A DNA stretch of 64,000 nucleotides from Octopus bimaculoides. Lineage: Eukaryota. The notes below the pieces were generated by a model, which worked only from the letters and a program-made list of their open reading frames with translations, was not told where the DNA came from and searched no databases. Both the position numbers and the translations under genes were made by a program. Numbering within the stretch: the stretch's first letter is position 1; each line of letters opens with the position of its first letter. The stretch spans positions 32,891,910 to 32,955,909 of the forward strand of contig NC_068999.1 of assembly GCF_001194135.2 (NCBI RefSeq), given 5' to 3'. Of this stretch, positions 2,251 to 53,727 are shown piece after piece.

Positions 2251-2387
2251 GTTTGGGCTTTAGCATTGCTGGAGGTGTGGGCAATGAACACATTCCAAAT
2301 GACCACGGTATATTTGTAACCAAAATCATAGATGGTGGGGCTGCTGAACAAGATGGCCGTCTGCAAGTTGGTGACCGTTTGCTGTCG
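2251..2387 (+). CDS. dlg1: Discs-large (MAGUK) coding exon, most of PDZ2 (G|[45 protein letters not shown])
   Basis: Peptide matches Dlg-family PDZ2 ([16 protein letters not shown]). Acceptor ttcttttcag|2251 and donor tcg|GTTAGT at 2388. Phase 1 in, phase 0 out. Confidence 0.95.
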
Positions 2388-3367: not shown

Positions 3368-3512
3368 GTGAACTATGAGGATTTGGATAATGTGACACAT
3401 GAAGAAGCAGTTGCAGCTCTCAAGGCGACATCAGATGTAGTGAAGTTAGTTGTGGCCAAATCCTCTTACATACACGATTCTGTACCTCTTGATGCTCCTT
3501 CGCCAAGCCAAA
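3368..3512 (+). CDS. dlg1: Discs-large coding exon, end of PDZ2 plus linker (VNYEDLDNVTHEEAVAALKATSDVVKLVVAKSSYIHDSVPLDAPSPSQ)
   Basis: VTHEEAVAALK..VxLxVAK is the Dlg PDZ2 C-terminal motif. Acceptor tttttaaag|3368 and donor aa|GTAAGA at 3513. Phase 0 start matches the previous exon; ends in phase 1. Confidence 0.95.
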
Positions 3513-3677
3513 GTAAGATTTGTTCGTTTCTTTAACATTTTACTTTTCTGTTGTTCAGATGGATTATGACAGTAGTGGTGGTCATAGTGATTGTATTTGT
3601 CGGTCAGTTCTTTGATCTGTGACAGTTTTTTTTATAGTCAGTTATTTGTTGTTGTTGCTGTTAATATTATTATTATT

Positions 3678-4475
3678 AAGGCAGCAAGCTGGCAGAATCA
3701 TTAGCATGTTGGGCAAAATGCTTAGCAGTATTTTGTCTTCACATTCTGAGCTCAGTATTCACTGAGGTTGACTTTGCCTTTCGTCCTTTTGGGGTTGATA
3801 AATTAAGTACCAGTTGATCAACTGTCCCCCTCCCTACAAAATTCAGGCTGTGTGCCTACAGTAGAAAGGTTTATTATTATTATCAAGGCATGAGCTGACA
3901 GAATTGTTAGCATGCTGGACCAAATGCTTAGTAGCACTTTGTACATCTTTACATTCTGAGCTCAAACTCTGCTGAGGTTGGCTTTGTTTTTCATCCTTTC
4001 AGGGTCGATGTAATCAACTTATCTCTTTCCTCCAGACTTGCTGGCTTTGTGCCAAAATTTGAAGTCATTCTCATTATTATTAAGGTGGAAAGCTGGCACA
4101 ATCATTAGCAAGTCAGACAAAATGCTTGTTAGCATTGCTTTCACTTCTGTACATTCTAAGCTCAGATTTTGTCAGGGTCAACTTTACCTTTCATCTTTTC
4201 AGGGTTGATAAAATAAGTACTAGTTAAGCTTTGGGGTTGATGTAATCACTTAGCCCACTCCCCACAAAATTGCAGGCTTTGTACCTATAGCAGAAAGGAT
4301 TATTATTAAGGTGGCAAACTAGCAGAATCATTAGCCTGTCTGACAAAATGCTTAGTGGCATTTATTCTGGCTTTTTACGTTTTAAGCTGAAATCTTGCTA
4401 AAGTAATATTTGCTTTTTGTCCTTTTGGGTCAATAAAATAAAGTACCAGTGAAGTACTGGGATTGATGTTATCGA
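3678..4475 (+). mobile_element. Head-to-tail train of about 4 tRNA-derived SINE copies (family A: ggcagcaagctggcagaatcattagca...ctgagttcaaat...gactttgcctttcatcctt...aagtaccag)
   Basis: Same ~200-bp unit repeated, joined by (ATT)n tails; many further copies in the window. Confidence 0.85.
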
Positions 4476-4759
4476 AATCACAAGAATGCTGACAGGAGTA
4501 CTGTAAACCATGAAACATTTTGCAGTTTTATAGTATCCACACTAATGTAACATAACTAGTAAATACTGTATTTGATGGCTTATGACACATACTTTTTCCA
4601 TCCAAAAATGACTTTAAAAATCACCCCAGGCCCAAAATGATAAATTGGACCACCCATAAGTTTTAATGCACTGAAAACCTTTTCCCTGAATATGCACTAC
4701 TGAAACTGGAGTGCATGAAATATGCTTGTGCATCATCCGTGCCATAAAAAAAGAAACTG

Positions 4760-5058
4760 GCACTTGATTGTGATGATGCGGTTTCCAGTTGATCCAATCA
4801 ACAGAACAGCCTGCTCATGGAATTAGTGTGCAGGTGGCTGAGCACTCTACAGACACATGTACCTTTAACATAGTTCTCAGGGAGATTCAGCATGAATGTG
4901 ATAAGGCTGGCCCTTTGAAATAGAGGTACTACTCATTATTGCTAGTTGCGTGGACTGGAGCAACATGAAGTAAAGTGACTTATTCAAGGACACAATGCAC
5001 TGCTGGTAATCAAACTCACAACCTTCCAATTATGAGCTGAATACCCTAACCACTAAAC
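4760..5058 (-). mobile_element. tRNA-derived SINE, second family
   Basis: Reverse complement begins ggtttagtggttagggtattcagc (A-box-like), the same head as the copy at 19685. Confidence 0.65.
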
Positions 5059-6437
5059 CTCCACTGCCTATACCGTACACTATGCAGCTGTGATTATATC
5101 TGGGCTATGATTGTAAGGCTTTTGATCTATAACAGTAAGGACTAAACTACAACTATACAAGTGATCTACATTACATTGTGCCACCTACTTAAGATGAGCT
5201 GGGCCTTTGAGAGATTAGTATTATGCACAGTCAGTGAGATGTCCTTCAGCAACAAACCTCCGGTCACTTATCTGGAACGCCAAATACTTATCTGCTGTAT
5301 GTAGCATTTTGTCTTATTTACTCAGCAGTTAATTGGGGAAGGTATTGGAGCGTTGGACAAAATCCCTTGCAGTAAATCCCACAAAAATCAACTTTCTTGT
5401 GTGAGTGCAGTACCAGTTAAGTACTGGGTTCATACAATCTATCGAGCTATCTCCCACCAATATTTCTTTTTTTATAATTTTTTTTTTTTTTTGCTTGTTT
5501 CAGTCATTGGACTGCAGCCATGCTGGGGTGCCACCTCAAAGGAAGGTTTAGTTGAACATATTGACCCCAGTAATTATATCATTATTTAAACCTGTTACTT
5601 ATTCTATCAGCCATTTTGATGAACCACTAAGTTACATAAACAAACCAACACTTAAGCAGTGATGGAAGAGGACAAGTACAACCTACACACTCATATTTGA
5701 GTGGACAAACAAAAGAAAAGTGCACTCAACATATTTATTAGGAATTACATGAATTACTTAAAACAGTTTGATTTGGCTCCATGAGAGTTGACGTTTCGCA
5801 GGTCTCTAACAGAAGCTCATCTCTTATAGGCTTAGATTACCAAATCAACTGTTTTAAATAACACACACACACACACACATGCAATGAGTTTCTGTTTCCA
5901 TCCACCAAATCCATTCACAATGGGTTGGCTGGCCTGGGTCTATAGCAGAAAACACTTGTCCAAGGTGGCTATGTCATGGGACTGAAGCCAAGACCACATG
6001 GTTGGAATGCAAACTTCTCAGCCACATAGCCAAGTCTTCAACTAATTATAATAATTATGTAAGGGATTAGCAGAGGGCTAGAGTGGTTGGGGTGGGGAAC
6101 TTTATGATCAACTTCATTTTGCAGACAACTTTAACTTCCATCCTTTGGACGTCACAAAAATGAGTACTAGTCAAATACTGGGGATCAGTGTCAGCGAGTA
6201 ACCCCTTCCTTTAGGGTTGCTGATCTTGTAACTAAATTAGATATAGTTATATTTGATGTCGGGAAGTAAAAGTGATTAGGAAAACCAAAAATGAAACTAC
6301 AGTTAAACTTAGAAGGAGGTAATTTGGAAGGAATTGACACTATTTGAAATCGTTACTAATGAATTATTTTTCATAGTATTTTAAGAACACAATTTACTAA
6401 GTGGAGGAAATTATGTTAGAAATGTATTTTAACAGAA

Positions 6438-6670
6438 ACTGGCCTTGTGGTCACGGTGTTCCTATCACGCTCGCGAGATCATAGGTTTGATTCCCGGGAA
6501 GGGCAATGTGTTGTGTTCATTGCACTGCGATCACATCGACATTTAACGTCCAGCACACTGCACCTGTACGGGCAATATCAGTTTGGTAGATTGAGCTAAT
6601 ATTCAGCACAAACATTCGATTGTTATAAACAAATCAGCTGTGCAGGTCGTTCAGCAAGAAAATTACATTC
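6438..6670 (+). mobile_element. tRNA-derived SINE-like element with retained CpGs
   Basis: A-box-like TGGCCTTGTGGT and B-box-like GGTTTGATTCCC. Confidence 0.55.
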
Positions 6671-7270
6671 TCGGACTTGAGAGATTATAAACGGGAAGAA
6701 AATTCAAGGGAAGTAACTCTAACATGATTTATTTCCCTTTCTTCGTTGGTGAAAGAAAAATTAACCAATTCATTTTTTTTTTTTTCTTCCGTCATTTTGG
6801 CGAAAATGAATATATATTTTCTTTATCTTAAGCTTAGGTTTCTTTTTTTTCTTTTACTATTTATGTTAACTATCCGAATTCAAGGTAAGAAATTGCGGTT
6901 TAAAATATGTATGATATCTTTCGTTTTTACTTTCAAATACTTTCAACTGTGCTTTATAAAAACATTACAAAAAAAAAAAAACAAACTAATCTTTCTTTTC
7001 TTTGGTCGCATATAATGTGTGTGTGTAACATGACACTTAGGCATACACCGTATGTAAAAACGCTATTGTGTCTTTGTGAGTATATGCATGCCCTACCACT
7101 CTGGTGGTGCATTGAACAGCACTAACCCCTCATTGTTCAATGGTGCCTCCTCAGATTTACTCCACTTTAGCATTATTACAAATAAGTGTCCTCCCAGAAT
7201 ATTCTGAAGCAAACCCCGCCCCCGGCACCAAAGTCTGACGGTGGGCCTGTGATTATTCCACCTTTTCTAG

Positions 7271-7288
7271 GTCCTTCCCAACAAACAG
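7271..7288 (+). CDS. dlg1: Candidate 18-nt in-frame microexon of dlg (adds S-P-S-Q-Q-T-V in place of M)
   Basis: Acceptor ttccaccttttctAG|, donor CAG|GTGAGC, branch-like CTGAC at 7235-7239. Phase 1/1 with no stop, between phase-1 neighbours. Confidence 0.7.
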
Positions 7289-7541
7289 GTGAGCAATTGT
7301 ACTCACTGTAAGGGTTACTGCCACTTGAAGCACTGCTTTAGTTTGGAAAAGAAATGGTCAGTATCTTAAACCATCTTAGTACAGGTTTGCTATTACATAG
7401 TTTCAGCTGGTCAAGCCTGTTTGTCCCATTTCGCCCCTATCTTCACAGAACTTTTAATGAATGTTTTCCTAGAAATACCTGTATGTACATGTTTTCACAT
7501 GCACACACACACACTCTCTCTCTCTCTCTCTCTCTCTCTCA

Positions 7542-7579
<38 letters not shown>

Positions 7580-7628
7580 TAGGCATTTTCTCTACACATG
7601 TACCAGATATGTGTATATGTGTGTATAG

Positions 7629-8012
7629 CTGCAGGTGTGGCAGTGTGGTTAGAAGCTTGCTTCCCAACCACATAGTTTGGGGTTTAGTCTGTATGGTACC
7701 TTGGGCAAGTGTCTTCTGCTAAAGCCTTGTGATTTGATAGACAGAAACTCAAAGAAGCTTGTATATATTTGTGTGTATATCATCATCATTATCGTGTGTG
7801 TGTGCATATATATATGTGTGTGTGTGTGTTTGTGTCATCACCAACCACCACTTGACAACCAGTGCCTGGTGTGTTTACATCCCTGTAACTTAGTGGTTCA
7901 GTGAAAAAGAGTGATAGAATAAGTACTGGTGTCGATGCATTCGACTAAAAATTCTTCAAGGCAGTGCTCCAGCATGGTCGCAGTCTAATAACTGAAACAA
8001 AAAATAAAAGAT
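7629..8012 (+). mobile_element. tRNA-derived SINE family B (gtgtggttagaagcttgcttcccaaccac...ccttgggcaagtgtctt...gactgaaacaa)
   Basis: Near-identical layout at 49011-49400; partial copies at 27295-27460 and 48315-48460, and minus-strand at 5505-5665, 5880-6032 and 52140-52405. Confidence 0.85.
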
Positions 8013-8239
8013 AGGTTAAAAGTAATTACTCCTGTTGTAAATATGTTAAGTGTGACCACAGCGTCTTTGTTTACATTCACTGTATCGTGTATACCCTTCT
8101 GTGTACTTCAACAAATGATTGTGTGTGAGAGAGAGAAAGATAGCTAAGAGTGATCAAACAAAAATTTCTATTTATATGCTAAGACTGTGTGTGTCTTTCT
8201 GTGTTTTTGCTAAGATTGTGTGTGTCTTTGTTGTTTCAG

Positions 8240-8366
8240 TGAGATCAGAAGATGTACAAGACACCTCAATTACTGCAGCAACCACCACCACCACGACCCT
8301 TCCCCACAATACCTCGACATTCCAACGACCAACTACTCCACGTCCACTGACAGATCCTGATTCTCC
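8240..8366 (+). CDS. dlg1: Discs-large linker exon before PDZ3 (RSEDVQDTSITAATTTTTTLPHNTSTFQRPTTPRPLTDPDSP)
   Basis: Acceptor ttgtttcag|8240 and donor cc|GTAAGT at 8367. Phase-1 start keeps the reading frame; low-complexity T/P/S linker as expected between PDZ2 and PDZ3. Ends in phase 2. Confidence 0.8.
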
Positions 8367-8419: not shown

Positions 8420-8860
8420 TGTGTAAGGGTGGAGTGGGAGGAGAGTGTGTGTGTCCTGGACACAAATGAAGGAACTGGGCCAGGTGGAATACATTGTGGA
8501 CACTGGTGAAGGAAGATGAGGAAGGAGAGTTTGTCCTGGGTTGGTGGGCAGAGGGGGATGGTTTGACCTGAACATTGGAGGAGGAGGGTGAAATGGGGGA
8601 AGTATGTCCTGGACACTGGTAGAGGAGGATGGTGAGATGAGGGAGTGTGTCCAGGATGCTGGGGAGGAGGGTGTATACTGGATATTGGTTTTTGATGGGA
8701 ATGTACTGGACAATGAGAAAGGGTGGAATGGGTACTTGGATGCACAAGGAGTTGGGGAGTTTGTTCTGGCAAAGGAAAGTGAGTGGGGTTCAACATGTGA
8801 TGGTTGTGTTGGACACTGGTTTGGTATGTTCCATAATTCCAAAGGGAGGTTTCATACTGG
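8420..8860 (+). repeat. G/purine-rich degenerate array with core TGTCCTGGACACTGG
   Basis: About 11 variant cores at 26-43 nt spacing (8452, 8495, 8532, 8564, 8605, 8648, 8674, 8702, ~8732, 8762, 8805). Confidence 0.7.
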
Positions 8861-10659
8861 GCCATTGTAGTTGATGTTGAAATGGTCACTTTGATACAGA
8901 CAATAGTGTTTTTAATATAGCAGTTTGTGTGTTGGATGTAGTCTGTGATTATGTAAAGAACTGGCATCTGAAAGATAAATTAGTTTACACAGTGTTCTCT
9001 TTCCTCTCCATGTATGATGTTCTGTGTTTATATTTAAAACTTTCCATGTAGAAGTATGACACACTGACATACACCCACATGTATTCACACACACTCATGT
9101 ATTCATATGCCTATGAATTAATGTAATCCAAATTTGTTTTTTATATAGTTTATTATTTTCTTCAACGATTTCTGTGTCCAGGACTATTTTGATGAACGAA
9201 GGGGAAAAATAGTTCTTGCCTTGCAGTAAACAACCTATGCACATGAAATTGGGGAAACTGTGATAAAAACCTATTCTCTTCCTTATGGATAATTTCTTTT
9301 CAGACTACGTTTCCCCATTTACAAAACAATCTCCTTTAAATTAATAGAATCCAAATTACCAATATTTCAAAAAAAAAAAAGAAAAAAAGATTATTTACTG
9401 TTTTCTCTCACTCTCTCCCCATCTCTCTTCACATACTTACAGACAGAGAGGTTTGCTGACACAGACAGGAAAATAGAACCCAAAAATATGTGTGTTTGTG
9501 TGTGTGTGTATCATCATCATCATCCTTTAACATTCATTTTCCATGTTGGCATGGGTTGGACAGTTTGACCAGAGCTAGCAAATTGGAGAACTGCAGCAAG
9601 TTTTAGTCTGATTTGGCCTGGTTTCTACAGCTGGATGCCCTTCCTAGCACCAACAACAGTGTGTGCTGGATGCTTTTTATGTAGCATGGACATACAGTAT
9701 CCATCCAGAAAATTTCACTCTCAGTTCAAGGTTTATAGTAGAAGAGACTTGTCCAAGGTACTATACTGTGGGATTAAGTCCAAAATATTTGGTTGCAGAG
9801 TAAGCGACCTAACTACATAACCATGACTACACATGTGACAAAGTTGGCTTCAGCATGACTTGAACTCAGAACACAGAGAGCCTGAACAAATTCTACAAGT
9901 CATTCTATCCAATAGTTTGATGACTCTGCTAATTCACTATCCAAAAATACTAAGGTCTTATTAACATTTGAACCCAAATCTCCAGATTCAAAGTTCTTAC
10001 CTTATTCTTTAGCAACAACCAGTTCTTATGATTATTTGCTTGCAATAATGTTGTTAAAACAAGGAATTCTTAGAGCTCAGCAAATCTTGCAAATTCTTTA
10101 TTTTCTCCCCATGAAAGCATAACATTTGAGGTGTTCAGGATTGTTAACAAGTGTTATTTCTCTATCCCCTCATTTCTAATCACCTCATACCTCAAGGTGT
10201 CACCTGAGCCCATCATCACTATTTATCTCTTTGGAACTCCCCTACAACAAAAACTTACTCAGCCCCATACCCTTGCTTCATACCCTAACTCTCATCTGCT
10301 AGCATAAAGCCCTTCCCCTCAGGTTTCATAAGCTGCATAGCAACCTGACTAGTGCTGGTAGCATGAGAAAAGCATCCAGAACACAGTAAATTGGTTGGCA
10401 TTACGAAGGATATTCAGCTGTAGGAACCATGCCAAAGCAAATACTGGAGCATGATGCAGTTCTTGGACACATCAGATCCTGTCAACCCATCTAATCCATG
10501 CCAGCATGAAACATGGACGTTAAATGATGATGATGACACACACACACACACACACATACATATGTGAATGTATAAGCTGTGGTATGGGGAAGAAAAGCGT
10601 AATTCACTTATCTCATGGGTCCTCTTAAATGTCAATTCTTTCCAGCTGAGATATATCCA

Positions 10660-12160
10660 TAAGAGCCATACCTGCCTAACCTCTGGTCAAAGCCTAACAG
10701 CAAATTCCCCCAAGCCATGCGGCCACTGCATCCATCCTAAACAACAGTCCCAAAGCAAAAGAGGCTCACACTAGTCTTCCTTCCACTCCTATGACTTCCC
10801 TCACTCTTCTCCTTTGGACAAGGCTCATTGACTATGCACATGGGTCACTGACCCTATACCTCTGGCCCATCTCAGTCCCACATTCTCCTCTGATCTCAAA
10901 GATCACTCCATCACCTCACTCCTTGTCAAAATCTACCATCCACGTGGGCAGAAGTCTAGCTGTTGTGACCTCTGCAGGGATGGTGCACTGCTTGAATCCT
11001 CCCCTACTTTGTCTTCTAACAAATCGACAATCCTGTGAAAATCCAAGAATTGACACGGCATTCCATCCACAGACATGTTGTGGCATTAAAGGCCACTTTT
11101 ATTCCTTTTCTTCATTGAGATATGCAATGTGCATTTGGGGCGGCTTGACCCAGACTTCATCCCCTAACTGCATGAAAATAGACTCACTCTCTTCAACAAA
11201 TCACTGTTATACTGTACATGGATGTCACTATTCTCTGTGGCACCGACTCTTCAGCCTGTCTTGACCAGAACAACATATACCAAAATACTGCCTCAGTTGG
11301 TGAGATATCTCCCCTCTCCACCATGGCCTTTGATCATGCAGTGGTCTCTCTCCGCAATTCCATTTCCACTTATTGAGCATTTCTTTCAGCACCTTCAAAT
11401 GAAATGCAGTACCATTGTCCATTAGCAATTCATCCACAGGATTCATGCAATTACATCTGCAGTCCCCGTCTTGATTTTGCTCAATTTCACCTTTCACCCT
11501 GGTCCTCAGTCAAAGATTGACAAGTATGTCCCCTGCCGTTTCCATTTGTGTTCCACTGGGATGTTTCCTGCCTCGTGCATACCCATAGCAGGGTCAATGG
11601 ATTGGTACCTGTCACAACTCTTAATGCTCTGTCTAGTAATGTTCGAGTCAACTTTCCTGACTAGGTACAATGTCCTATTCACTCCCATATGACGCATGGT
11701 ATGCAGTCTTCTTAGCTCTGAGTTGTTTTGGCATTGCCAACCAGGCTTTTCTCATCCTGGTTAGCACATCCACAATATTCCTTTCCTTGGGTACAAAGAC
11801 TGCAACCAGGAAGAAATCAAGAAGTTGTTGAAAATTGCTGAAGTTTCTGAAATGTTTCTCTAGACTCAGATCATTCAAACGAAAATAGTTTGTGGTATGA
11901 GGGGAAAAGTGTACTCCACCAACTTCACCTCTCATAACAGCAATCCTTCCTAGCCACCTAACTTCTGGCCAGGACTAAACAACAAATTTTATGGACTCAT
12001 GCGGCCACAGCGTCCATCCCAAGCAACAGCTCCAAATTGAAAGAGGCCCATACTAGACATCCTTCTGCTCACATGACCTCCCTTACTCCTTCCAGCAAGG
12101 CTCCTAAGTCATTTACATGAATTCACTGACCCTATATTTCTGGCCTATCTCAGCCCTACA
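10660..12160 (-). mobile_element. Heavily decayed retroelement-like segment bounded by ~210-bp direct repeats (10670-10880 / 11950-12160)
   Basis: The direct repeats align by eye. Minus-strand peptide AVFVPKERNIVDVLTR loosely resembles an RNase H C-terminal motif. Family uncertain. Confidence 0.4.
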
Positions 12161-14074
12161 TAAATAGTGCATTATTTAGACAATTGCTTATTCTTTGGAC
12201 CTATCTAAATATTTCTTATACATCAAGTCAGTTTATTTTAGGGCAGTGCTCTCCTTCCTTTATAACAACAGACTCTCCCTGACAATAGTAGGCTCTCCTC
12301 AATAACTTCCTGTTTTCCAGTTACCTCCCTTAGATTTAAAGGCTGTGTGTGTGTGTGGATAGATGGAGTGGGGGAGATAAACTAGTTTTTCCAGTTTAAC
12401 ATTCGCTGACTAAACGAAATTCCTCTCTAATTGTATTACTGACTTACTGACTGTGACTTCTTTTTTTTATATTTTACTGCAAATATAAATACAGTCAAAC
12501 GTTCAATGATGTTGCAGAGATTTTACCATAATTTATTAAAACATTCTATTGAACTGGTTTTTCATTGTTTATAGTTTAGTAGGAAGGGTGTTGACCACAG
12601 CTAACACTTAAAGGGAGGTGAGATTTCTTCTTGAAACAGGAAGAGCTGGTTGAAATTGCTACTTTATGAGAGAACTGTTATTATGGAATGAGTGGGAGAA
12701 ATTGGTATAAGATGTTAAGATCTTAACTTTGGAAACAAACACTTGAGTAGTAGCAGTAAAATTGTTTGTTTTGATATTAAAACTACTGAAGTAGCTGGTT
12801 AAGTCTAAATGCAAGATTATCTTAAGGTATGGGCACACTAATCAGTTGCCCAGAGGCCTCACTAGTCTAGGAGCCAAGTGCATTGATTTGCTTGGAGGTG
12901 CTTATGAAGCTGCTAAGACAGTTTTGACTAAATGACATGACAATCCATTATTGGCAGATGCCTTGACAGTCTGTTGCTGGTAGATGGCATGACAGTGAGG
13001 TTAAGTGTTTGTGAAGAATCACTATTACTAGCTCTATCTATAGCAGACTCCTGGTTAATTTTTTTGGTGATAAGGATCCAGTAATGAGAAGAAAACGTCA
13101 AACAATTGATAGAATTGGTAAAGTGGTGGATGAAATTACAGCAGGATATTTGGTTGAATCAGAAGAGTAGCACCTAAAATTCTTTGCAGTATTTGTGTTA
13201 AAATCTCATTGAGGTCATTTGTACTTTCCATCCTTTTGATTTGATAAAATAAAGTACCAGTCATTGTCCTGGGTTCAATTAATCAACTATACTCCTAAAT
13301 GAGTGATTAGATGTAACTTTTACAGTTCTTGTTATTTTGGTGGTGGTTTATCAGAATGAGTACAGGAGTGAAAAAAAGTGTCTTAGAGTATTTAGTTATG
13401 GTGCTTGACATTCTGAGTTCAAATCCTTCCAAAGTTATCTTTGACTTTCATCGTTCTGATGTTAATGAATTACTAGTTGCATAACGTTACTCAAATAAGT
13501 ACCAGTGATGTACTAAGTTCAATAAACTGGTTGAACCTTGTCTCCAAAATTTCTGTCTCACTGATTGATTAGCAGTCATTTGAGTTTAAATGTTGCTCTG
13601 GTCATCTTTGCTTTTCATCATTCTGTTCAACAAAATAAAATACCAATCAAAATACTAGGGTTGATTTAAAGGACTAACTCCTTCCAAATTTCTTTTCCTA
13701 AATTTCAGGCATTGTTCCCATGTTGGAATTATTATTAGTGTTGAGGACTGGTAGAATTATTATAAGGACAGCTGGTTAGTTAAAGTGCCTGTCAACAAAT
13801 GGGAATACTGAATGCTATCAGGTGATTAACTAGCAATGATAGTGTCTGTTAGCAGGTGGTAATAATGTTGTTTCTCTTGAGAGGTGGAGGTTATAGCAGT
13901 TGATAATAGCAAGTGGCAATAATGTTTATTAACATATGATGTTAGTGGTAGATAACAGGTAGTACTAGTAACTATTAACAAGCAATGACAATGATTTTCT
14001 CAACAAGCTGGCAATAATGTCTGTTAATAGTTGGTACTGGTGTTAGCACTTGACACCAGGCTTTTATTATTATT

Positions 14075-16705: not shown

Positions 16706-17335
16706 AACTACATTGTCTTCATAATTGAAAGCCTTTTGCCTTTATCAAAAATCGATAGTAATGTAAGTTATGTATGAGAAAGTTTATATATCTACAGTGG
16801 TTTGCTATCTAGGGTCAAATGGGACCATAGGGAAAGAATCAACTAACCTCGTTTCCAAAGAAAATAATGCATCATGGAATTTTTACCAAACCAATTGACA
16901 ACCAAGGCATGATGGGATTTGCATGTATTATGAATCAAAAACTGCAATAAACTGCATGCAGCTTTGCAAACATGGACAAACTCACCTATTATTATTTAAA
17001 ATTTCAATCTAAATTTTTTTTGTATCATTTATTATGTTTCTTTCTTCTTTTACTATCATATTTTAAAAAAATTTATTTTTATTATTACTTTTTAAATTTC
17101 TTAAATTTTTTTCATACATTTTCTTTTAAATTCTTTTTGTTTCTTTTTTCATATTGGAAATTTGCTGCACATGTTTGGTTTCATGTACTAGTTCCATGAT
17201 TCACAACCGTTATTGAAACTGGATTTTAAACTCTGCATCGTGTCATCCGATAAAATTCATACCAGATTCTAAATTTACAACTTTACGTACACACACACAC
17301 ATATATATATATATATAAATGTTATNNNNNNNNNN

Positions 17336-31733: not shown

Positions 31734-32529
31734 NNNNNNNNNNNNNNNNNNNNNNNNNNNNNNNNNNNNNNNNNNNNNNNNNNNNNNNNNNNNNNNNNNN
31801 NNNNNNNNNNNNNNNNNNNNNNNNNNNNNNNNNNNNNNNNNNNNNNNNNNNNNNNNNNNNNNNNNNNNNNNNNNNNNNNNNNNNNNNNNNNNNNNNNNNN
31901 NNNNNNNNNNNNNNNNNNNNNNNNATATATCAAGTTAAACAATTATGCATACATATATATATATATATATATATAAACTAAGTTACATATATATATATAT
32001 TTAACTTGGTATATATATATATATATATATATCAAGTTAAACAATTATGCATACAGATATATATATATATATATATAAATTACATAACAGATATGTCTAT
32101 CTGTTTACTTTCATATACATTTCCCTACATACATGTGCTTATACATACACACACACACATATCTGCATAATAGCCCACTAACTATTCTACGTTTTATAAA
32201 TATAACCTGTGGGTAGGGGGGGGGGGGGTAATTATCTACTAAGTATATTTCCTGTTTAGTTCTGGGGATGTTTCATTTACGTGGACATACTCCTGTATTT
32301 GTCTGAGTGTTGGGCGCTTGGATAAAATGTGGGTGTCAAGTTGATCCAGGTTGCCTCCATGTTGGTCCTTGGCATGTTCGTAGAGTATGGACAACAACAA
32401 AAAACAGTCAGCATTTTATCCAAGCATGCAAAGGACCCAACACTATATATATATATATGTATGTATATATATACACACAAATTATATATATGTATACAAA
32501 TTTATACATATATACACACAAATTATATC

Positions 32530-35682: not shown

Positions 35683-36528
35683 NNNNNNNNNNNNNNNNNN
35701 NNNNNNNNNNNNNNNNNNNNNNNNNNNNNNNNNNNNNNNNNNNNNNNNNNNNNNNNNNNNNNNNNNNNNNNNNNNNNNNNNNNNNNNNNNNNNNNNNNNN
35801 NNNNNNNNNNNNNNNNNNNNNNNNNNNNNNNNNNNNNNNNNNNNNNNNNNNNNNNNNNNNNNNNNNNNNNNNNNNNNNNNNNNNNNNNNNNNNNNNNNNN
35901 NNNNNNNNNNNNNNNNNNNNNNNNNNNNNNNNNNNNNNNNNNNNNNNNNNNNNNNNNNNNNNNNNNNNNNNNNNNNNNNNNNNNNNNNNNNNNNNNNNNN
36001 NNNNNNNNNNNNNNNNNNNNNNNNNNNNNNNNNNNNNNNNNNNNNNNNNNNNNNNNNNNNNNNNNNNNNNNNNNNNNNNNNNNNNNNNNNNNNNNNNNNN
36101 NNNNNNNNNNNNNNNNNNNNNNNNNNNNNNNNNNNNNNNNNNNNNNNNNNNNNNNNNNNNNNNNNNNNNNNNNNNNNNNNNNNNNNNNNNNNNNNNNNNN
36201 NNNNNNNNNNNNNNNNNNNNNNNNNNNNNNNNNNNNNNNNNNNNNNNNNNNNNNNNNNNNNNNNNNNNNNNNNNNNNNNNNNNNNNNNNNNNNNNNNNNN
36301 NNNNNNNNNNNNNNNNNNNNNNNNNNNNNNNNNNNNNNNNNNNNNNNNNNNNNNNNNNNNNNNNNNNNNNNNNNNNNNNNNNNNNNNNNNNNNNNNNNNN
36401 NNNNNNNNNNNNNNNNNNNNNNNNNNNNNNNNNNNNNNNNNNNNNNNNNNNNNNNNNNNNNNNNNNNNNNNNNNNNNNNNNNNNNNNNNNNNNNNNNNNN
36501 NNNNNNNNNNNNNNNNNNNNNNNNNNNN
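35683..36528. other. Assembly gap (846 N); other gaps at 17326-17335, 31734-31924, 49933-49942 and 50757-50856
   Basis: Runs of N. Confidence 1.
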
Positions 36529-48493: not shown

Positions 48494-49010
48494 TATATAT
48501 ATATTTTTTCCTTTAGGGGAATTGTATATCCACCAATGCAGTGTGGAGCACTCATTTCATCGTTTGACATTTACAAACACACACACACACAACGTTTGTG
48601 TATGTCTGTGTGACTTAGTGTCACCCTCATACAAGTGATGTCTTTTGTTTCTTGTATTCCATGAAAAAATGTCCAGCCATAGAGGAATGTTACTTTACTT
48701 AGTAAGGGAATATTACTTTACTTAGTAACAACTGAGAGTTGATGACAAGAAGGATATTAGACTATAGAAAAATTTGCTTTAACAAATCCCATCCAACCCA
48801 TGCAAGCATGGAAAAACGGATTATGTTAAATAATGATTGTGATGGTGTATGTCAGTATTCATGTAATTATTGTCCATCAGTCAACAACATAGTGTTATGG
48901 AAATGAGTGTGTGCCTAGAGAAAATATACTTGTTTAAATATTAATAAATAACCTTCAGCTACTATCATCAATGGATTAAGAAGGATAGATGAAAGAATTT
49001 TGAGTAATTG

Positions 49011-49400
49011 CAAGTGTGGCTGTGTGGTAAGAAGCTTCCTTGCCAACCACATGGTTTTAGGTTCAGTCCCACTGTGTAGCACTGTGGGCAAGTGTCTTTT
49101 ACTATAACCTCAGGCCAACCAAAGCCTTGTGGATGGATTTGGTAGACATAAACTGAAAGAAGTCCATCATGTTTGTGTGTATGTGTTTTCCCCCTACACC
49201 ACCACCACCACCAATTGATAACCAGTGTTGGTGTGTTTATGTCCTTGTAACTTAGTGGTTTGGCAAAAGAAACTGATGGTATAAGTACTAGGCTTAAAAA
49301 CCTAAAATAAGTACTGGAGCCAATTCATTTGACTAACGAATCTTCAAGGCAGTGCCCCAGCATGGCTGCAGTCTCATGACTGAAACAAGTAAAACATAAA
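49011..49400 (+). mobile_element. Family-B SINE, near full length
   Basis: Homologous to 7629-8012. Confidence 0.85.
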
Positions 49401-50071
49401 AATAATTGGTAAATATCAATGCAGCTAATTGGTTAAATTCACCTTTCAAGGTGTTGAAAGGCTGTCAGTTACAAACAGGGAGTTTGCGTGTTTGTTTATT
49501 CATAAGCTACACTGTACATAATAAATTTTCAGTTTTCTTAAAATTTTTGCAAGTTCTCTACACACTTGTCTTTAGTATAAAATTTATGCTAGTTTTTGAT
49601 CGTACGGATATATTGAATCAACTTGGACATAATTTAATCTTATACCATCAACGAATGGTCAAAATTTGCCTGGTAGAAGTAAACTGTGTATGAAACACTA
49701 ATCATAATTTAATCTTATATATATATTGTTGTATTTCAGGATGGTAATTTTTTTTTTTTTTTTTTTTTTTTGCCAAATAAACACATGCACTATATATATC
49801 TTTCTTCACTTATTTATTACTGTTCTTATTTTATATAAGAACAGTACAAGAAGGTTTGGAGGTAATGTACAGATATTATATATATACTGTTGTGTCTGGG
49901 GAGAGTCATTCTCTTTTGGTGCCTTATAATTTNNNNNNNNNNTTTAATACACTCACCAGAAAAATTTCCACTTATAAGGCACCAAAAGAGAATGACTCTC
50001 CCCAGATACAACAGAATATGCTTCAACACATGAAATCACATAAAGAATCTTTCAAGCCAAATCCAAAAATG

Positions 50072-50646: not shown

Positions 50647-50856
50647 AAGAAATATTGATTATTTGGTTTTGTAGCCATGCAGGCATACATACTCATGAAT
50701 ACATACTATGTGTGTGTGTGTGTGTGTGTATATATGTGTGTGTGTGTGTATATATGNNNNNNNNNNNNNNNNNNNNNNNNNNNNNNNNNNNNNNNNNNNN
50801 NNNNNNNNNNNNNNNNNNNNNNNNNNNNNNNNNNNNNNNNNNNNNNNNNNNNNNNN

Positions 50857-50887
<31 letters not shown>

Positions 50888-53727
50888 TATATATATATAC
50901 ATGTATTTATGAATGGTTATATAAACCAATTAATACAAGCATGTATGTTGGGCTGAGGCATTTAGCTATTTTGACAATCTCATGTAAAAATTATTTTATG
51001 CCCTAGGCATGTGTTAACAGGAAAATTTAAGTAGCAACATTATGATAGACGTGTTATAGTTAAATAAATAATGAGACACAATTCTGCTGTTGCTGCTTCT
51101 AATGGTGATTGTGACTGTGGTTGAGCAGTTGGTATTTATTGTGGTGGTAATTGTGAGGGTTATAGTGCTGCTACTAGTGAAGTGATGATATCGCTGACGA
51201 TGTTGATTGATACATTTATAGTGTTTCATCTACTGCACTAACTATAAAAGCTATTTCACATTCTATTTTGTTGGTTTTTCTCTATTTTATTTCCATCGCA
51301 CATTTATATTACTGGGAAAAGCAGCAGCATGTTCAGGGAGGGTTAACATAGCAGTTATTATTTCTGTTGTCTGTTCAGGGACTTTAACAGTTCTAACCAG
51401 GAAAATGTGTTGAAATTTCAAAATATAATCAAAGCCTATATCAGAACAGCTTTCATACATAAAAGCTGAGTTGCTGAAAAATAAATGTTTTATGCCATTA
51501 TTTCCATAGAATTATTTTTGTTGCATGCTGTCATTGTGTGGCTGAGCACTGCTTTAGGTGGGTCTTGGTTTCTTGCAGTGTTTGTTTTCTTTCTTTGTGT
51601 TTTTAATTTTTTATTATATTGACAGCACTCTAAATAATACATGTATAGTAGCTAATAGTACATTGTGTGCATTTAAGTCCAGCAGTTTTTGTTATGCATT
51701 TGTTTGCTGGTTTTTAATCAGTCTCACGGTAACTATTTGTGTGACGATTGCTTTTGTTTTCAACCCTCATGTTCTGATTATCTCTATTCCCATATCTTTA
51801 TATTCGGATAGATGGGTATTTTTCTTCATGTAATTCATTATCATATGTTGGGATTGATACATCAAACGGTAGGCATTTCCCTTTTTTTTTTTTGGTATCT
51901 TGGTTGTCCTTGACAGCAACATCTGGTTAATTAGCTATCATCTCTCTAACTACAGTATTGCATGTCCTAAATTATGGTCAGTTTGTACTTCAAGACCTTT
52001 TCTAGCATATCTACTATGTTTTTTCTGTTGGTATTTTACAATACTGACATAATTTCCAGAGTATGAAAGTTCCAGCTCTGTCGTTCTTGTGTGTGTGTGT
52101 GCATATGTGTGCATACATGTACATATATATTCTTTGTAAGCCTAGTACTTTTTTTATCAGTTTCTTTTGCTGAACCACTAAGTTACAGGGCCGTAGGCAG
52201 GGAGATAAACATAGACACAAAGACACACATGCATAAATACATATATATATATATATATATATATACATACATACATACGTACAACAGGCTTCTTTCAGTT
52301 TCCATCTACCAAATTCACTCACAAGCCTGAGGCTATAGTAGAAGACACTTGCCCAAGGTACCATGTGGTTGGGAAGCAAGCTTCTTACCACACAGCCATG
52401 CCTGCACCTATAACATATTTATGTATATAACTATCATCATTGTTTAAATATCCACTTTTCCATTCTTGCATGGTTTGGGCAGAATTTATTGAAATAGCTT
52501 TTCTATGGTTATCACCTGTCAACAGCATCTACTCCATTAGTCCATCTTGTGACCAACAGCACTACTCTGTCCACCTTCAAATAACTTTTGACTACCACTG
52601 TTCAGTCCATTTTATGTTTGGATATCTACCAGCCACAACTCAGTTTTATGCTCAGATAACTACTAAACATCATTTGTTCAAATACCTACTGATTGTTTCT
52701 ATTGCTCTGTCCATTTTGTGCCCAAATAACTTGGGTATGAGATGTTTTGGCACAGTAGTTGTGGATTTGGTTATTTGGTGTTTCTAATTCAATACTGACT
52801 TGAAGTTTTAATATCTCTCTTGTTCTCTCTTTCTGTTTATGTGTATGAACCTTATTATTTTTAAATGTATGAGGAGAGGGGGAAAAATCATGTTCAATTA
52901 ATAAATTGAAATCTCTCTCTCTCTCTCCTTCCTATCTGTATGTGTATATTTCTGTGTGCTTGTGTGTGTATTTGCATCCAGTGCCAAAAAGTACTATCCC
53001 CAAAAGACATTCAGTCCTGTCAGCCATGCCCAATAGTCTCATTCTGAAATAACTAATGACCATCTAGTTTCAAATAACTACTGGCCACTTCTGCTCTGAC
53101 ACTCTTAATGTTTGATGTAATCCAACTGAATGTGATTGGTGATTCTAGTATCTGCATGTGAGAGAGAGAGGTATGTGGGAAGAGTTTGTGTGTGTTTGCT
53201 TGGGAGAGGTGGAAAGTATGTTTGTATGAGCAAGTGTATATGAGAGATGTATTTGCATAAACCAATAGAGAAGCTGGAAGAGTTTCTGTTTTCTTCCAGG
53301 ACTATTTTCCAAATTTCTCACCAGTGGCCAAAGAACCAAATTTTAACCCTAAACAAAAGCTCTTTTATTGAATTTTAGTCAACATAGATATGATGTTTGT
53401 ATGTGTGAATGTCTACATATATATCTACGGATTTGTTTCTTCCTTTTCTTTTCTTTTGTTCACTTTCCTTTATTTTCCCTTTCTTTTTTCATTTTACCCT
53501 TTTATCATATTTAGTTTCTGCCATCTCAGCCTATGACAGGAAATCTGTATATCTATATAAATGTACAAATTCCATCAATTTTTCAGTTATAACTTGCCTG
53601 AAGACCCTGTGCACTGCACCTATAGACGAAACTCAGAGTACCATGAGACTAACTCAATCAAAATAAAATATGTTATTAATCTCTAATATGGTATTGACCA
53701 GTCTTTTTTCCTATAGTCCACATTTAT

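What the first reader, a model, noticed from the sequence alone, without database searches (positions are those of the whole stretch)
7271..7288. Candidate 18-nt microexon in the dlg PDZ2-PDZ3 linker, invisible to the ORF track
Seen: GTCCTTCCCAACAAACAG has a pyrimidine-rich acceptor, a CAG|GTGAGC donor and a CTGAC ~31 nt upstream. It is frame-preserving in exactly the needed phase (1/1) and changes ..SPSQ-M-RSED.. to ..SPSQ-SPSQQTV-RSED.., adding an extra SP site. Nearby DNA keeps CpGs (CCCCGCCCCCGG). Known: neural microexon programmes (SRRM3/4 eMIC) are bilaterian-ancient and enriched in synaptic scaffolds. I see no UGC right before the AG, so eMIC dependence is unsupported.
Basis: partly seen in the sequence, partly recalled or inferred. 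Interest (0 to 1): 0.7.

Follow-up and report, generated by a model that had tools for sequence, protein, structure and literature searches.

The report
Likely 18-nt dlg linker microexon
An 18-base stretch inside an intron of a discs-large (dlg) synaptic scaffold gene has all the sequence marks of a tiny in-frame exon and stands out clearly from chance, but no transcript or close-relative data could be reached to show that it is used.

Summary
7271-7288 (GTCCTTCCCAACAAACAG) is flanked by ttttctAG| and |GTGAGC. A CTGAC branch-point motif lies 31 nt upstream, with no AG in between. The exon fits the phase-1 intron between the PDZ2 exon 3368-3512 and the linker exon 8240-8366, and turns ..SPSQ-M-RSED.. 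into ..SPSQ-SPSQQTV-RSED...

It is more than chance. It is the only one of 177 in-frame, stop-free AG..GT pairs in the intron with two positive splice-site scores. It is the top intronic candidate in 175 kb of strand sequence. Shuffles of the intron match it in 0.5% of cases; a consensus count on real sequence gives about 4%. Separately, its peptide is the most linker-like of 196 peptides that follow good acceptors, and only 0.6-1.8% of background hexapeptides match it.

Against it, the only orthologous locus I could retrieve (L001, a deeply diverged relative) has no counterpart. No transcript data were reachable. There is no UGC motif upstream, so SRRM3/4 (eMIC) dependence is not supported.

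Verdict: probably a real, lineage-restricted cassette microexon (about 0.6), otherwise a well-formed pseudoexon. It would be a new member of a known kind, of modest interest.

The parts
2251..2387 (+). dlg exon encoding the first half of PDZ2 (..[46 protein letters not shown]). Acceptor ttttcAG|GT, donor TCG|GTTAGT.
   Evidence: tblastn with PSD-95; sequence; the spliced PDZ2 peptide matches PSD-95 PDZ2 best, 105 bits against 75 for PDZ1 and 41 for PDZ3; Pfam PDZ E=1e-21; orthologous exon in L001 8593-8739.
3368..3512 (+). dlg exon encoding the end of PDZ2 and the start of the linker (VNYEDLDNVTHEEAVAALKATSDVVKLVVAKSSYIHDSVPLDAPSPSQ plus A). It ends in phase 1; donor AAA|GTAAGA.
   Evidence: Orthologous exon in L001 10041-10184 has the same phase.
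7236..7240 (+). Candidate branch point CTGAC (yUnAy). Its A at 7239 is 31 nt upstream of the acceptor G, and no AG lies between 7234 and 7268.
   Evidence: Sequence; branch-point and AG-exclusion test passed.
7251..7270 (+). Polypyrimidine tract plus acceptor: gattattccaccttttctAG.
   Evidence: acceptor score 3.6 bits against 1.4 and 2.3 for the neighbouring real exons; 13 of 16 pyrimidines.
7271..7288 (+). Candidate 18-nt cassette microexon, phase 1/1. With the flanking split codons it encodes S-P-S-Q-Q-T-V in place of M, a net gain of 6 residues.
7289..7294 (+). Donor GTGAGC (CAG|GTGAGC). It is the only GT on the + strand of the window with a donor score >=8.95 bits.
8240..8366 (+). dlg linker exon ((A)TG AGA.. 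= M/V-RSEDVQDTSITAATTTTTTLPHNTSTFQRPTTPRPLTDPDS). Acceptor gtttcAG|TG, donor TCC|GTAAGT.
   Evidence: Orthologous exon in L001 13020-13151; 22 of the 24 residues in the tblastx match are identical (HNTSTFQRPTTPR.LTDPDSP).

Best explanation
7271-7288 is a real 18-nt cassette exon of the dlg gene, included in at least some mRNAs.

Inferred mechanism: U2 snRNP/U2AF recognise the CUGAC branch point, the 13/16 pyrimidine tract and UAG|G. U1 binds the near-consensus CAG|GUGAGC only 18 nt downstream. The unusually strong sites, stronger than those of the neighbouring constitutive exons, make up for the lack of room for exonic enhancers. Because there is no UGC motif next to the 3' splice site, recognition does not follow the SRRM3/4 (eMIC) code.

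Inclusion keeps the frame. It replaces the junction codon Met with Ser..Val and inserts Pro-Ser-Gln-Gln-Thr. The flexible linker after PDZ2 becomes six residues longer, and the Ser-Pro-Ser-Gln motif is duplicated, giving a second possible proline-directed phosphorylation site. The expected effect is a change in spacing or regulation between the PDZ1-2 tandem and the PDZ3-SH3-GUK module.

Shown: the sequence anatomy, the reading frame, the statistical outlier status and the linker-like composition. Inferred: actual splicing, alternative versus constitutive use, tissue pattern and functional effect.
For: 1. All the required signals are present and correctly spaced.
2. It is the only frame-preserving open AG..GT pair in the 4.7-kb intron with both splice scores positive, out of 177. 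Its summed score is 12.6 bits. The next intronic candidate with two positive site scores reaches 9.7 bits, across 175 kb of strand sequence and 3 phases.
3. Chance reproduces it in 0.5% of intron shuffles and about 4% by a matrix-free count on real sequence.
4. Independent coding evidence: SPSQQT is the most linker-like of 196 peptides that follow good acceptors. With a composition taken only from the L001 orthologue, 29 of 53 real linker hexapeptides reach its score, against 1.8% of background hexapeptides.
5. No other acceptor or donor nearby gives an in-frame alternative.
6. The region is not a repeat copy within the window, not an Rfam RNA and not a stable RNA structure (z = 0.2).
7. The flanking exon boundaries and phases are confirmed by an orthologous locus.
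8. Context from the literature: neural alternative exons turn over fast. About 51% of neural exon orthogroups are restricted to one species, and such exons arise recurrently in the same genes (bioRxiv 10.64898/2026.09.05.749416). Absence in a distant relative is therefore not disqualifying.
Against: There is no transcript evidence of any kind. The protein collection contains only unspliced ORF calls for this gene family and nothing from close relatives.

The only orthologous intron available (L001 10185-13019) has no similarity to the candidate. Its best possible microexon scores -3.4 bits.

Intronic pseudoexons with good splice sites are common in animal genomes, and very short exons are intrinsically hard to define (established knowledge).

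The splice matrices are generic metazoan values from my own knowledge, not trained on this species. The real donors in this gene are GTAAGT-like rather than GTGAGC. The composition test was designed after the peptide had been seen.
Confidence: 0.6

Rival explanations
1. It is a chance pseudoexon: an intronic sequence that happens to carry a good acceptor, a good donor and an open frame, but that the spliceosome never or hardly ever uses.
For: One equally good chance configuration exists on the minus strand of the same window (rc coordinates 2483-2494), a rate of about 0.04 per intron. The L001 orthologue has no counterpart and no sequence similarity. There is no UGC, Rbfox (UGCAUG) or CU-repeat motif nearby that would mark a regulated microexon. 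The S/P-rich peptide partly follows from the pyrimidine-rich start of the exon. Similarity to the end of the upstream exon is not significant (p = 0.05).
Against: Joint chance of the splice configuration (0.5-4%) and the linker-like peptide (0.6-1.8%) is of the order of 1e-4 to 1e-3 per intron. That is below any reasonable prior for a small alternative exon in an interdomain linker of a heavily spliced scaffold gene.
Confidence: 0.33
2. The acceptor at 7271 starts an alternative terminal or premature-stop exon. Read-through of the donor gives SPSQQTGEQLYSL-stop, which would produce a truncated PDZ1-2-only Dlg or an unstable transcript.
For: Reading through the donor hits a stop after 13 codons. 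One AATAAA lies at 8003.
Against: The donor directly after the 18 nt is the strongest on this strand of the window, so read-through is unlikely. The single polyadenylation hexamer is 715 nt away and is expected by chance in AT-rich DNA.
Confidence: 0.03
3. It is a recursive-splicing intermediate (RS exon) that helps stepwise intron removal and is itself removed from the mature mRNA.
For: It is a good 3' splice site followed closely by a good 5' splice site, as in vertebrate RS exons (established knowledge).
Against: The intron is only 4.7 kb, while recursive splicing is a feature of introns of tens to hundreds of kb. After the first step, the reconstituted 5' splice site would be AAA|GTCCTT, which is very poor (sequence).
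Confidence: 0.02

Closest known systems
Neural microexons controlled by the eMIC domain of SRRM3/SRRM4 (Srrm234 in invertebrates)
   Same: Size (3-51 nt), frame preservation, location in a disordered interdomain region of a synaptic scaffold, a consensus branch point and an AG-free zone upstream.
   Different: The defining UGC motif close to the 3' splice site is absent, with none within 100 nt. The 3' splice site is good rather than extremely weak, and the 5' splice site is very strong; fly eMIC exons have weak 3' and 5' sites (PMC8797185). Neural specificity is unknown.
Alternative insertions of vertebrate DLG1/SAP97 (I1A/I1B, I2-I5) and isoform exons of Drosophila dlg1 (own knowledge)
   Same: Small in-frame cassette exons in interdomain linkers of a Dlg-family MAGUK, which tune partner binding or localisation without touching the folded domains.
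   Different: Those lie N-terminal to PDZ1 or in the SH3-GUK HOOK region, not after PDZ2, and most are longer than 18 nt. No homology to them was tested or is expected.
Proline-directed phosphosite Ser295 in the PDZ2-PDZ3 linker of PSD-95 (own knowledge: Kim et al. 2007, Neuron)
   Same: A Ser-Pro motif in the same linker of a Dlg-family protein, shown there to regulate synaptic accumulation.
   Different: That site is constitutive sequence, not supplied by an alternative exon. Whether the SP motifs here are phosphorylated is unknown.
Intronic pseudoexons (own knowledge: Sun and Chasin 2000)
   Same: An intronic AG..GT pair with good splice-site scores and no evidence of use.
   Different: Typical pseudoexons are 50-200 nt and are not selected for frame or composition. 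This one is in frame, open and compositionally like the neighbouring coding sequence.

Membership tests
Cassette microexon (3-51 nt) | Length 3-51 nt with canonical AG and GT borders | tested here: met
   18 nt, AG at 7269-7270, GT at 7289-7290.
Cassette microexon (3-51 nt) | Keeps the reading frame of the flanking exons, with no stop codon | tested here: met
   Phase 1/1; the junction peptide changes from SPSQ-M-RSED to SPSQ-SPSQQTV-RSED. It is the only in-frame combination of nearby splice sites.
Cassette microexon (3-51 nt) | Found spliced into mature mRNA | not testable with these tools
   No RNA-seq is available. The protein collection holds only unspliced ORF calls.
Cassette microexon (3-51 nt) | Exon and flanking intron conserved in related species | tested here: inconclusive
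   The counterpart is absent from the only orthologous locus (L001). That species is so diverged that no intron aligns at all. No closer relative could be reached.
eMIC (SRRM3/4)-dependent neural microexon | UGC motif close upstream of the 3' splice site | tested here: not met
   No TGC in 7171-7270; the nearest are downstream at 7319, 7334 and 7388.
eMIC (SRRM3/4)-dependent neural microexon | Weak 3' splice site region with a long AG exclusion zone (PMC8797185) | tested here: not met
   The acceptor scores above the neighbouring constitutive exons. The AG-free zone is only about 35 nt (7234-7268).
eMIC (SRRM3/4)-dependent neural microexon | Neuron-specific inclusion that depends on Srrm234 | not testable with these tools
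   Needs tissue RNA-seq or knock-down.
Dlg-subfamily MAGUK gene (host gene) | PDZ domain most similar to PDZ2 of DLG1-4, followed by a linker | tested here: met
   PSD-95 domain 2 scores 105 bits against 75 (PDZ1) and 41 (PDZ3); the top PDB hits are all DLG1-4; Pfam PDZ E=1e-21.
Dlg-subfamily MAGUK gene (host gene) | PDZ3-SH3-GUK module downstream | tested here: inconclusive
   Not found in 8367-64000. It presumably lies beyond a >55 kb intron, outside the window.
Recursive splice site / RS exon | Very long host intron, and a strong 5' splice site reconstituted at the junction | tested here: not met
   The intron is 4.7 kb. The reconstituted site would be AAA|GTCCTT.

The most novel reading that the evidence does not exclude
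A lineage-restricted, eMIC-independent microexon arose recently in this animal's dlg gene. It duplicates the Ser-Pro-Ser-Gln motif of the PDZ2-PDZ3 linker and so acts as a splice-controlled phospho-switch or spacer, tuning how the PDZ1-2 tandem couples to the PDZ3-SH3-GUK module at synapses. That would be an independent, convergent route to the scaffold isoform diversity that vertebrates obtained through DLG gene duplication.
Probability: 0.12. Interest if true: 0.55.

Novelty: new member of a known kind. Interest (0 to 1): 0.35.

Why it matters
Dlg/PSD-95 scaffolds organise synapses. Molluscs have few Dlg genes, so isoform diversity has to come from splicing (the argument of PMC9282427). If the exon is real, it would be a concrete, easily tested example of splice-level diversification of a core synaptic scaffold in a large-brained invertebrate lineage, sitting in the same linker that carries a regulatory Ser-Pro phosphosite in PSD-95. 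It would also show that ORF-blind scanning can recover exons that annotation tends to miss. If it is a pseudoexon, it serves as a calibration point: even a 'perfect' 18-nt exon signature is not sufficient.

Tried and rejected
1. Spliced protein evidence. A search with the inclusion isoform found only four unspliced ORF calls from other animals.

2. Closer relatives, all negative:
- The PDZ2a exon search gave 201 hits, but only L001 and L002 belong to the same clade, and L002 (3.3 kb) does not reach the intron.
- Intronic ORFs next to the candidate, used as handles for orthologous DNA, were not on record and had no homologue.
- Two JGI metagenome scans, one with protein patterns and one with the exact 23-mer, found nothing.

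3. Literature. No paper links dlg, this linker and microexons in cephalopods. No supplementary tables are held as text. The accession of L001's assembly appears in no paper.

4. Exon-end duplication. The idea was that SPSQ|SPSQQT is a copy of the end of the upstream exon. DNA similarity is not significant (16 against a background mean of 11.4; 5% of random segments do as well). Rejected as unsupported.

5. Transposon-derived exon. There is no second copy of 7100-7460 in the window and no tRNA-like element. This is not excluded for a low-copy element.

6. Intronic small RNA. Rfam gives only sub-threshold hits on a microsatellite 260 nt away, and the region has no stable fold. Rejected.

7. The 8-mer GTCCTTCC also occurs in L001's linker exon (13034-13041). 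It is in a different frame and at a position that aligns to the window's own linker exon, so it is a coincidence.

8. CpG retention as a sign of constraint. It is significant only in a hand-picked 30-nt window. Not used.

Full report
**What is there.** The window carries part of a discs-large (dlg) family gene on the + strand.
- Exon 2251-2387 and exon 3368-3512 together encode a PDZ domain. It matches PDZ2 of PSD-95/DLG4 best: 105 bits, against 75 for PDZ1 and 41 for PDZ3. All the top solved structures are DLG1-4, and Pfam PDZ gives E = 1e-21.
- Exon 3368-3512 ends ..DAPSPSQ plus one base (A), so it ends in phase 1, with donor AAA|GTAAGA.
- The next recognisable exon is 8240-8366: (A)TG AGA TCA.. 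= M-RSEDVQDTSITAATTTTTTLPHNTSTFQRPTTPRPLTDPDS.
- PDZ3, SH3 and GUK are not found in the remaining 55 kb. 'PDZ2-PDZ3 linker' is therefore an inference from family architecture.
- The window has 34.7% G+C, CpG o/e of 0.27 and several N gaps. I could not verify the taxon.

**The observation.**
- The exon is 7271-7288, GTCCTTCCCAACAAACAG.
- The acceptor is ccaccttttctAG|, with 13 of 16 pyrimidines and T at -3.
- The donor is CAG|GTGAGC, matching 8 of 9 positions of MAG|GTRAGT.
- CTGAC lies at 7236-7240, with its A 31 nt from the acceptor and no AG in between.
- Inclusion keeps phase 1/1 and changes SPSQ-M-RSED to SPSQ-SPSQQTV-RSED.
- There is no TGC in the 100 nt upstream.
- The three CpGs (7217, 7223, 7239) are unusual only in a 30-nt window (0.7% of windows). 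Over 100-200 nt they are not (about 20% of windows).

**Is it more than chance?** I scored every AG..GT pair of 3-51 nt with generic metazoan splice-site matrices. The values come from my own knowledge and are not trained on this species.
- The candidate scores 3.6 bits (acceptor) and 9.0 bits (donor). The real neighbouring exons score 1.4/2.3 and 2.3/0.5.
- Of 177 frame-preserving, stop-free pairs in the intron 3513-8239, it is the only one with both scores >=0.
- Its donor is the only one on the + strand of the whole window at >=8.95 bits.
- Across 175 kb of strand sequence (window, L001 and L002, both strands, all three phases) it is the best intronic candidate, at 12.6 bits. The runner-up (11.8) has a negative donor score. 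The next candidate with two positive sites has 9.7.
- Dinucleotide-preserving shuffles of the intron reach its summed score in 10 of 2000 cases.
- A matrix-free criterion asks for a donor >=8/9, a pyrimidine at -3, >=12/16 pyrimidines, and an open in-frame length of 3-51 nt. It finds the candidate plus one chance case on the minus strand, which is about 0.04 per intron of this size.
- I therefore put the chance of such a configuration in this intron at 0.5-4%.

**A second, roughly independent line.** I scored the encoded peptide against the amino-acid composition of the real linker.
- SPSQQT ranks first of 196 peptides that follow good acceptors in the window.
- It lies in the top 0.6% of all stop-free hexapeptides of the window.
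- When the composition is taken only from the orthologue L001, 29 of 53 true linker hexapeptides of the window reach the candidate's score, against 1.8% of background hexapeptides. That is a likelihood ratio of about 30.
- Two discounts apply. The test was designed after the peptide had been seen. The pyrimidine-rich exon start also favours Ser and Pro codons.

**Other readings of the DNA.**
- No alternative acceptor or donor within 400 nt gives another in-frame exon. Reading through the donor stops after 13 codons.
- The 7100-7460 region has no other copy in the window and no tRNA-like element.
- It gives no Rfam match and no stable RNA fold (z = 0.2).
- The resemblance of the candidate to the end of the upstream exon (TCCTTC-CCAA-CAAA) is not significant (p = 0.05).

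**Comparative evidence.** The protein collection holds almost only prokaryote-style ORF calls on stray eukaryotic contigs.
- One of these (P0001) led to L001, a 20-kb piece of a 264-kb ENA contig with the same gene.
- In L001 the PDZ2a, PDZ2b and linker exons sit in the same order, and the intron that would hold the microexon has the same boundaries and phase 1. Amino-acid identity in the tblastx matches is 87%, 77% and 92%.
- L001 and L002 are the only ones of 201 hits that share the PDZ2 signature GNEHIP(N/S)DHG with the window. They are therefore the closest relatives available, but their introns do not align at all.
- In L001's orthologous intron (10185-13019) nothing resembles the candidate. 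The best possible in-frame microexon scores -3.4 bits.
- The exon is therefore not deeply conserved. This weighs against an ancient microexon, but only mildly against a lineage-restricted one. A recent bilaterian survey that includes an octopus reports that about half of neural exon orthogroups are confined to a single species, and that neural exons arise recurrently in the same genes (bioRxiv 10.64898/2026.09.05.749416).
- Every attempt to reach closer relatives or transcripts failed.

**Mechanism proposed.** The most likely reading is a genuine cassette microexon.
- It would be defined by an unusually strong U1 site 18 nt from a good branch point, pyrimidine tract and AG.
- It lacks the UGC motif and the weak 3' splice site that characterise SRRM3/4 (eMIC)-dependent exons (PMC8797185). 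If it is regulated at all, some other factor does so, and it may even be constitutive.
- At the protein level it lengthens the flexible linker after PDZ2 by six residues and duplicates the Ser-Pro-Ser-Gln motif.
- In PSD-95 the same linker carries the regulatory proline-directed site Ser295 (own knowledge), so a splice-supplied extra SP site is a plausible regulatory handle.
- Only the anatomy, the frame and the statistics are shown. Splicing, tissue pattern and function are inferred.

**Weighing.**
- Take a prior of 1-5% for an extra small exon in such an intron.
- Take a likelihood ratio of 10-100 from the splice signals.
- Take a ratio of 5-30 from the composition.
- Take a penalty of about 0.3-0.5 for absence in L001.
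- The posterior then spans roughly 0.15-0.95. I settle on 0.6 for 'real exon', 0.33 for 'pseudoexon', and a few percent for an alternative terminal exon or a recursive-splicing intermediate.

**Novelty and interest.** Microexons in synaptic scaffolds are a known kind. At best this is a new, probably lineage-specific member, and it may already be present in isoform models that I cannot see. Interest is modest (0.35). The claim is cheap to settle with junction reads or one RT-PCR.

Noticed in passing
window 8420-8830 (+): A G-rich stretch (42% G, 9% C, 16 GGG runs) forms a degenerate ~44-nt tandem repeat (GTCCTGGACACTGG..GGAGGAGGG..). It starts about 55 nt after the weak donor TCC|GTAAGT of the linker exon and leaves all three minus-strand frames open for 360-590 nt. 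It could be a G-run intronic splicing enhancer or simply a minisatellite.
   Followed up: partly
window 8367-64000: No PDZ3, SH3 or GUK exon is detectable in the 55 kb after the linker exon. Either the intron is >55 kb or exons are hidden in gaps (N runs at 17326-17335, 31734-31924, 35683-36528, 49933-49942, 50757-50856).
   Followed up: partly
window 7615-7780; 52261-52418 (-); 49009-49182 (+): Three copies of a dispersed repeat at about 70% identity lie 330 nt downstream of the candidate. Spurious ORFs across two of them share the peptide ..VRSLLPNH..VPWASVF...
   Followed up: no
window 7547-7638: Sub-threshold Rfam hits to mir-3149, mir-5583 and mir-1277 on both strands (best 38 bits against a gathering score of 100). 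They fall on a palindromic CA/TA microsatellite and are most likely an artefact.
   Followed up: partly
L001 8593-13151; L002 2283-2603: An unnamed ENA contig (ERZ21867824 ctg120709l, 28% G+C) and a Logan contig (SRR9969974) carry the closest dlg orthologues. PDZ2 in the window, L001 and L002 shares the signature GNEHIP(N/S)DHG, which none of the other 201 hits has. In L001 the exon order, and the boundaries and phase of the intron in question, are conserved, but the introns do not align. L001 also has a candidate upstream exon at 5165-5242 (VKRPKSPAEHLLEIELVKGNKG).
   Followed up: partly
window 2251-2274: Inside the real PDZ2a exon, an internal GT (GGAG|GTGTGG) pairs with the true acceptor to give the highest-scoring 'microexon' in the scan (13.0 bits). 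This shows that the scan also picks up real acceptors, and that such internal donors exist in constitutive exons.
   Followed up: no
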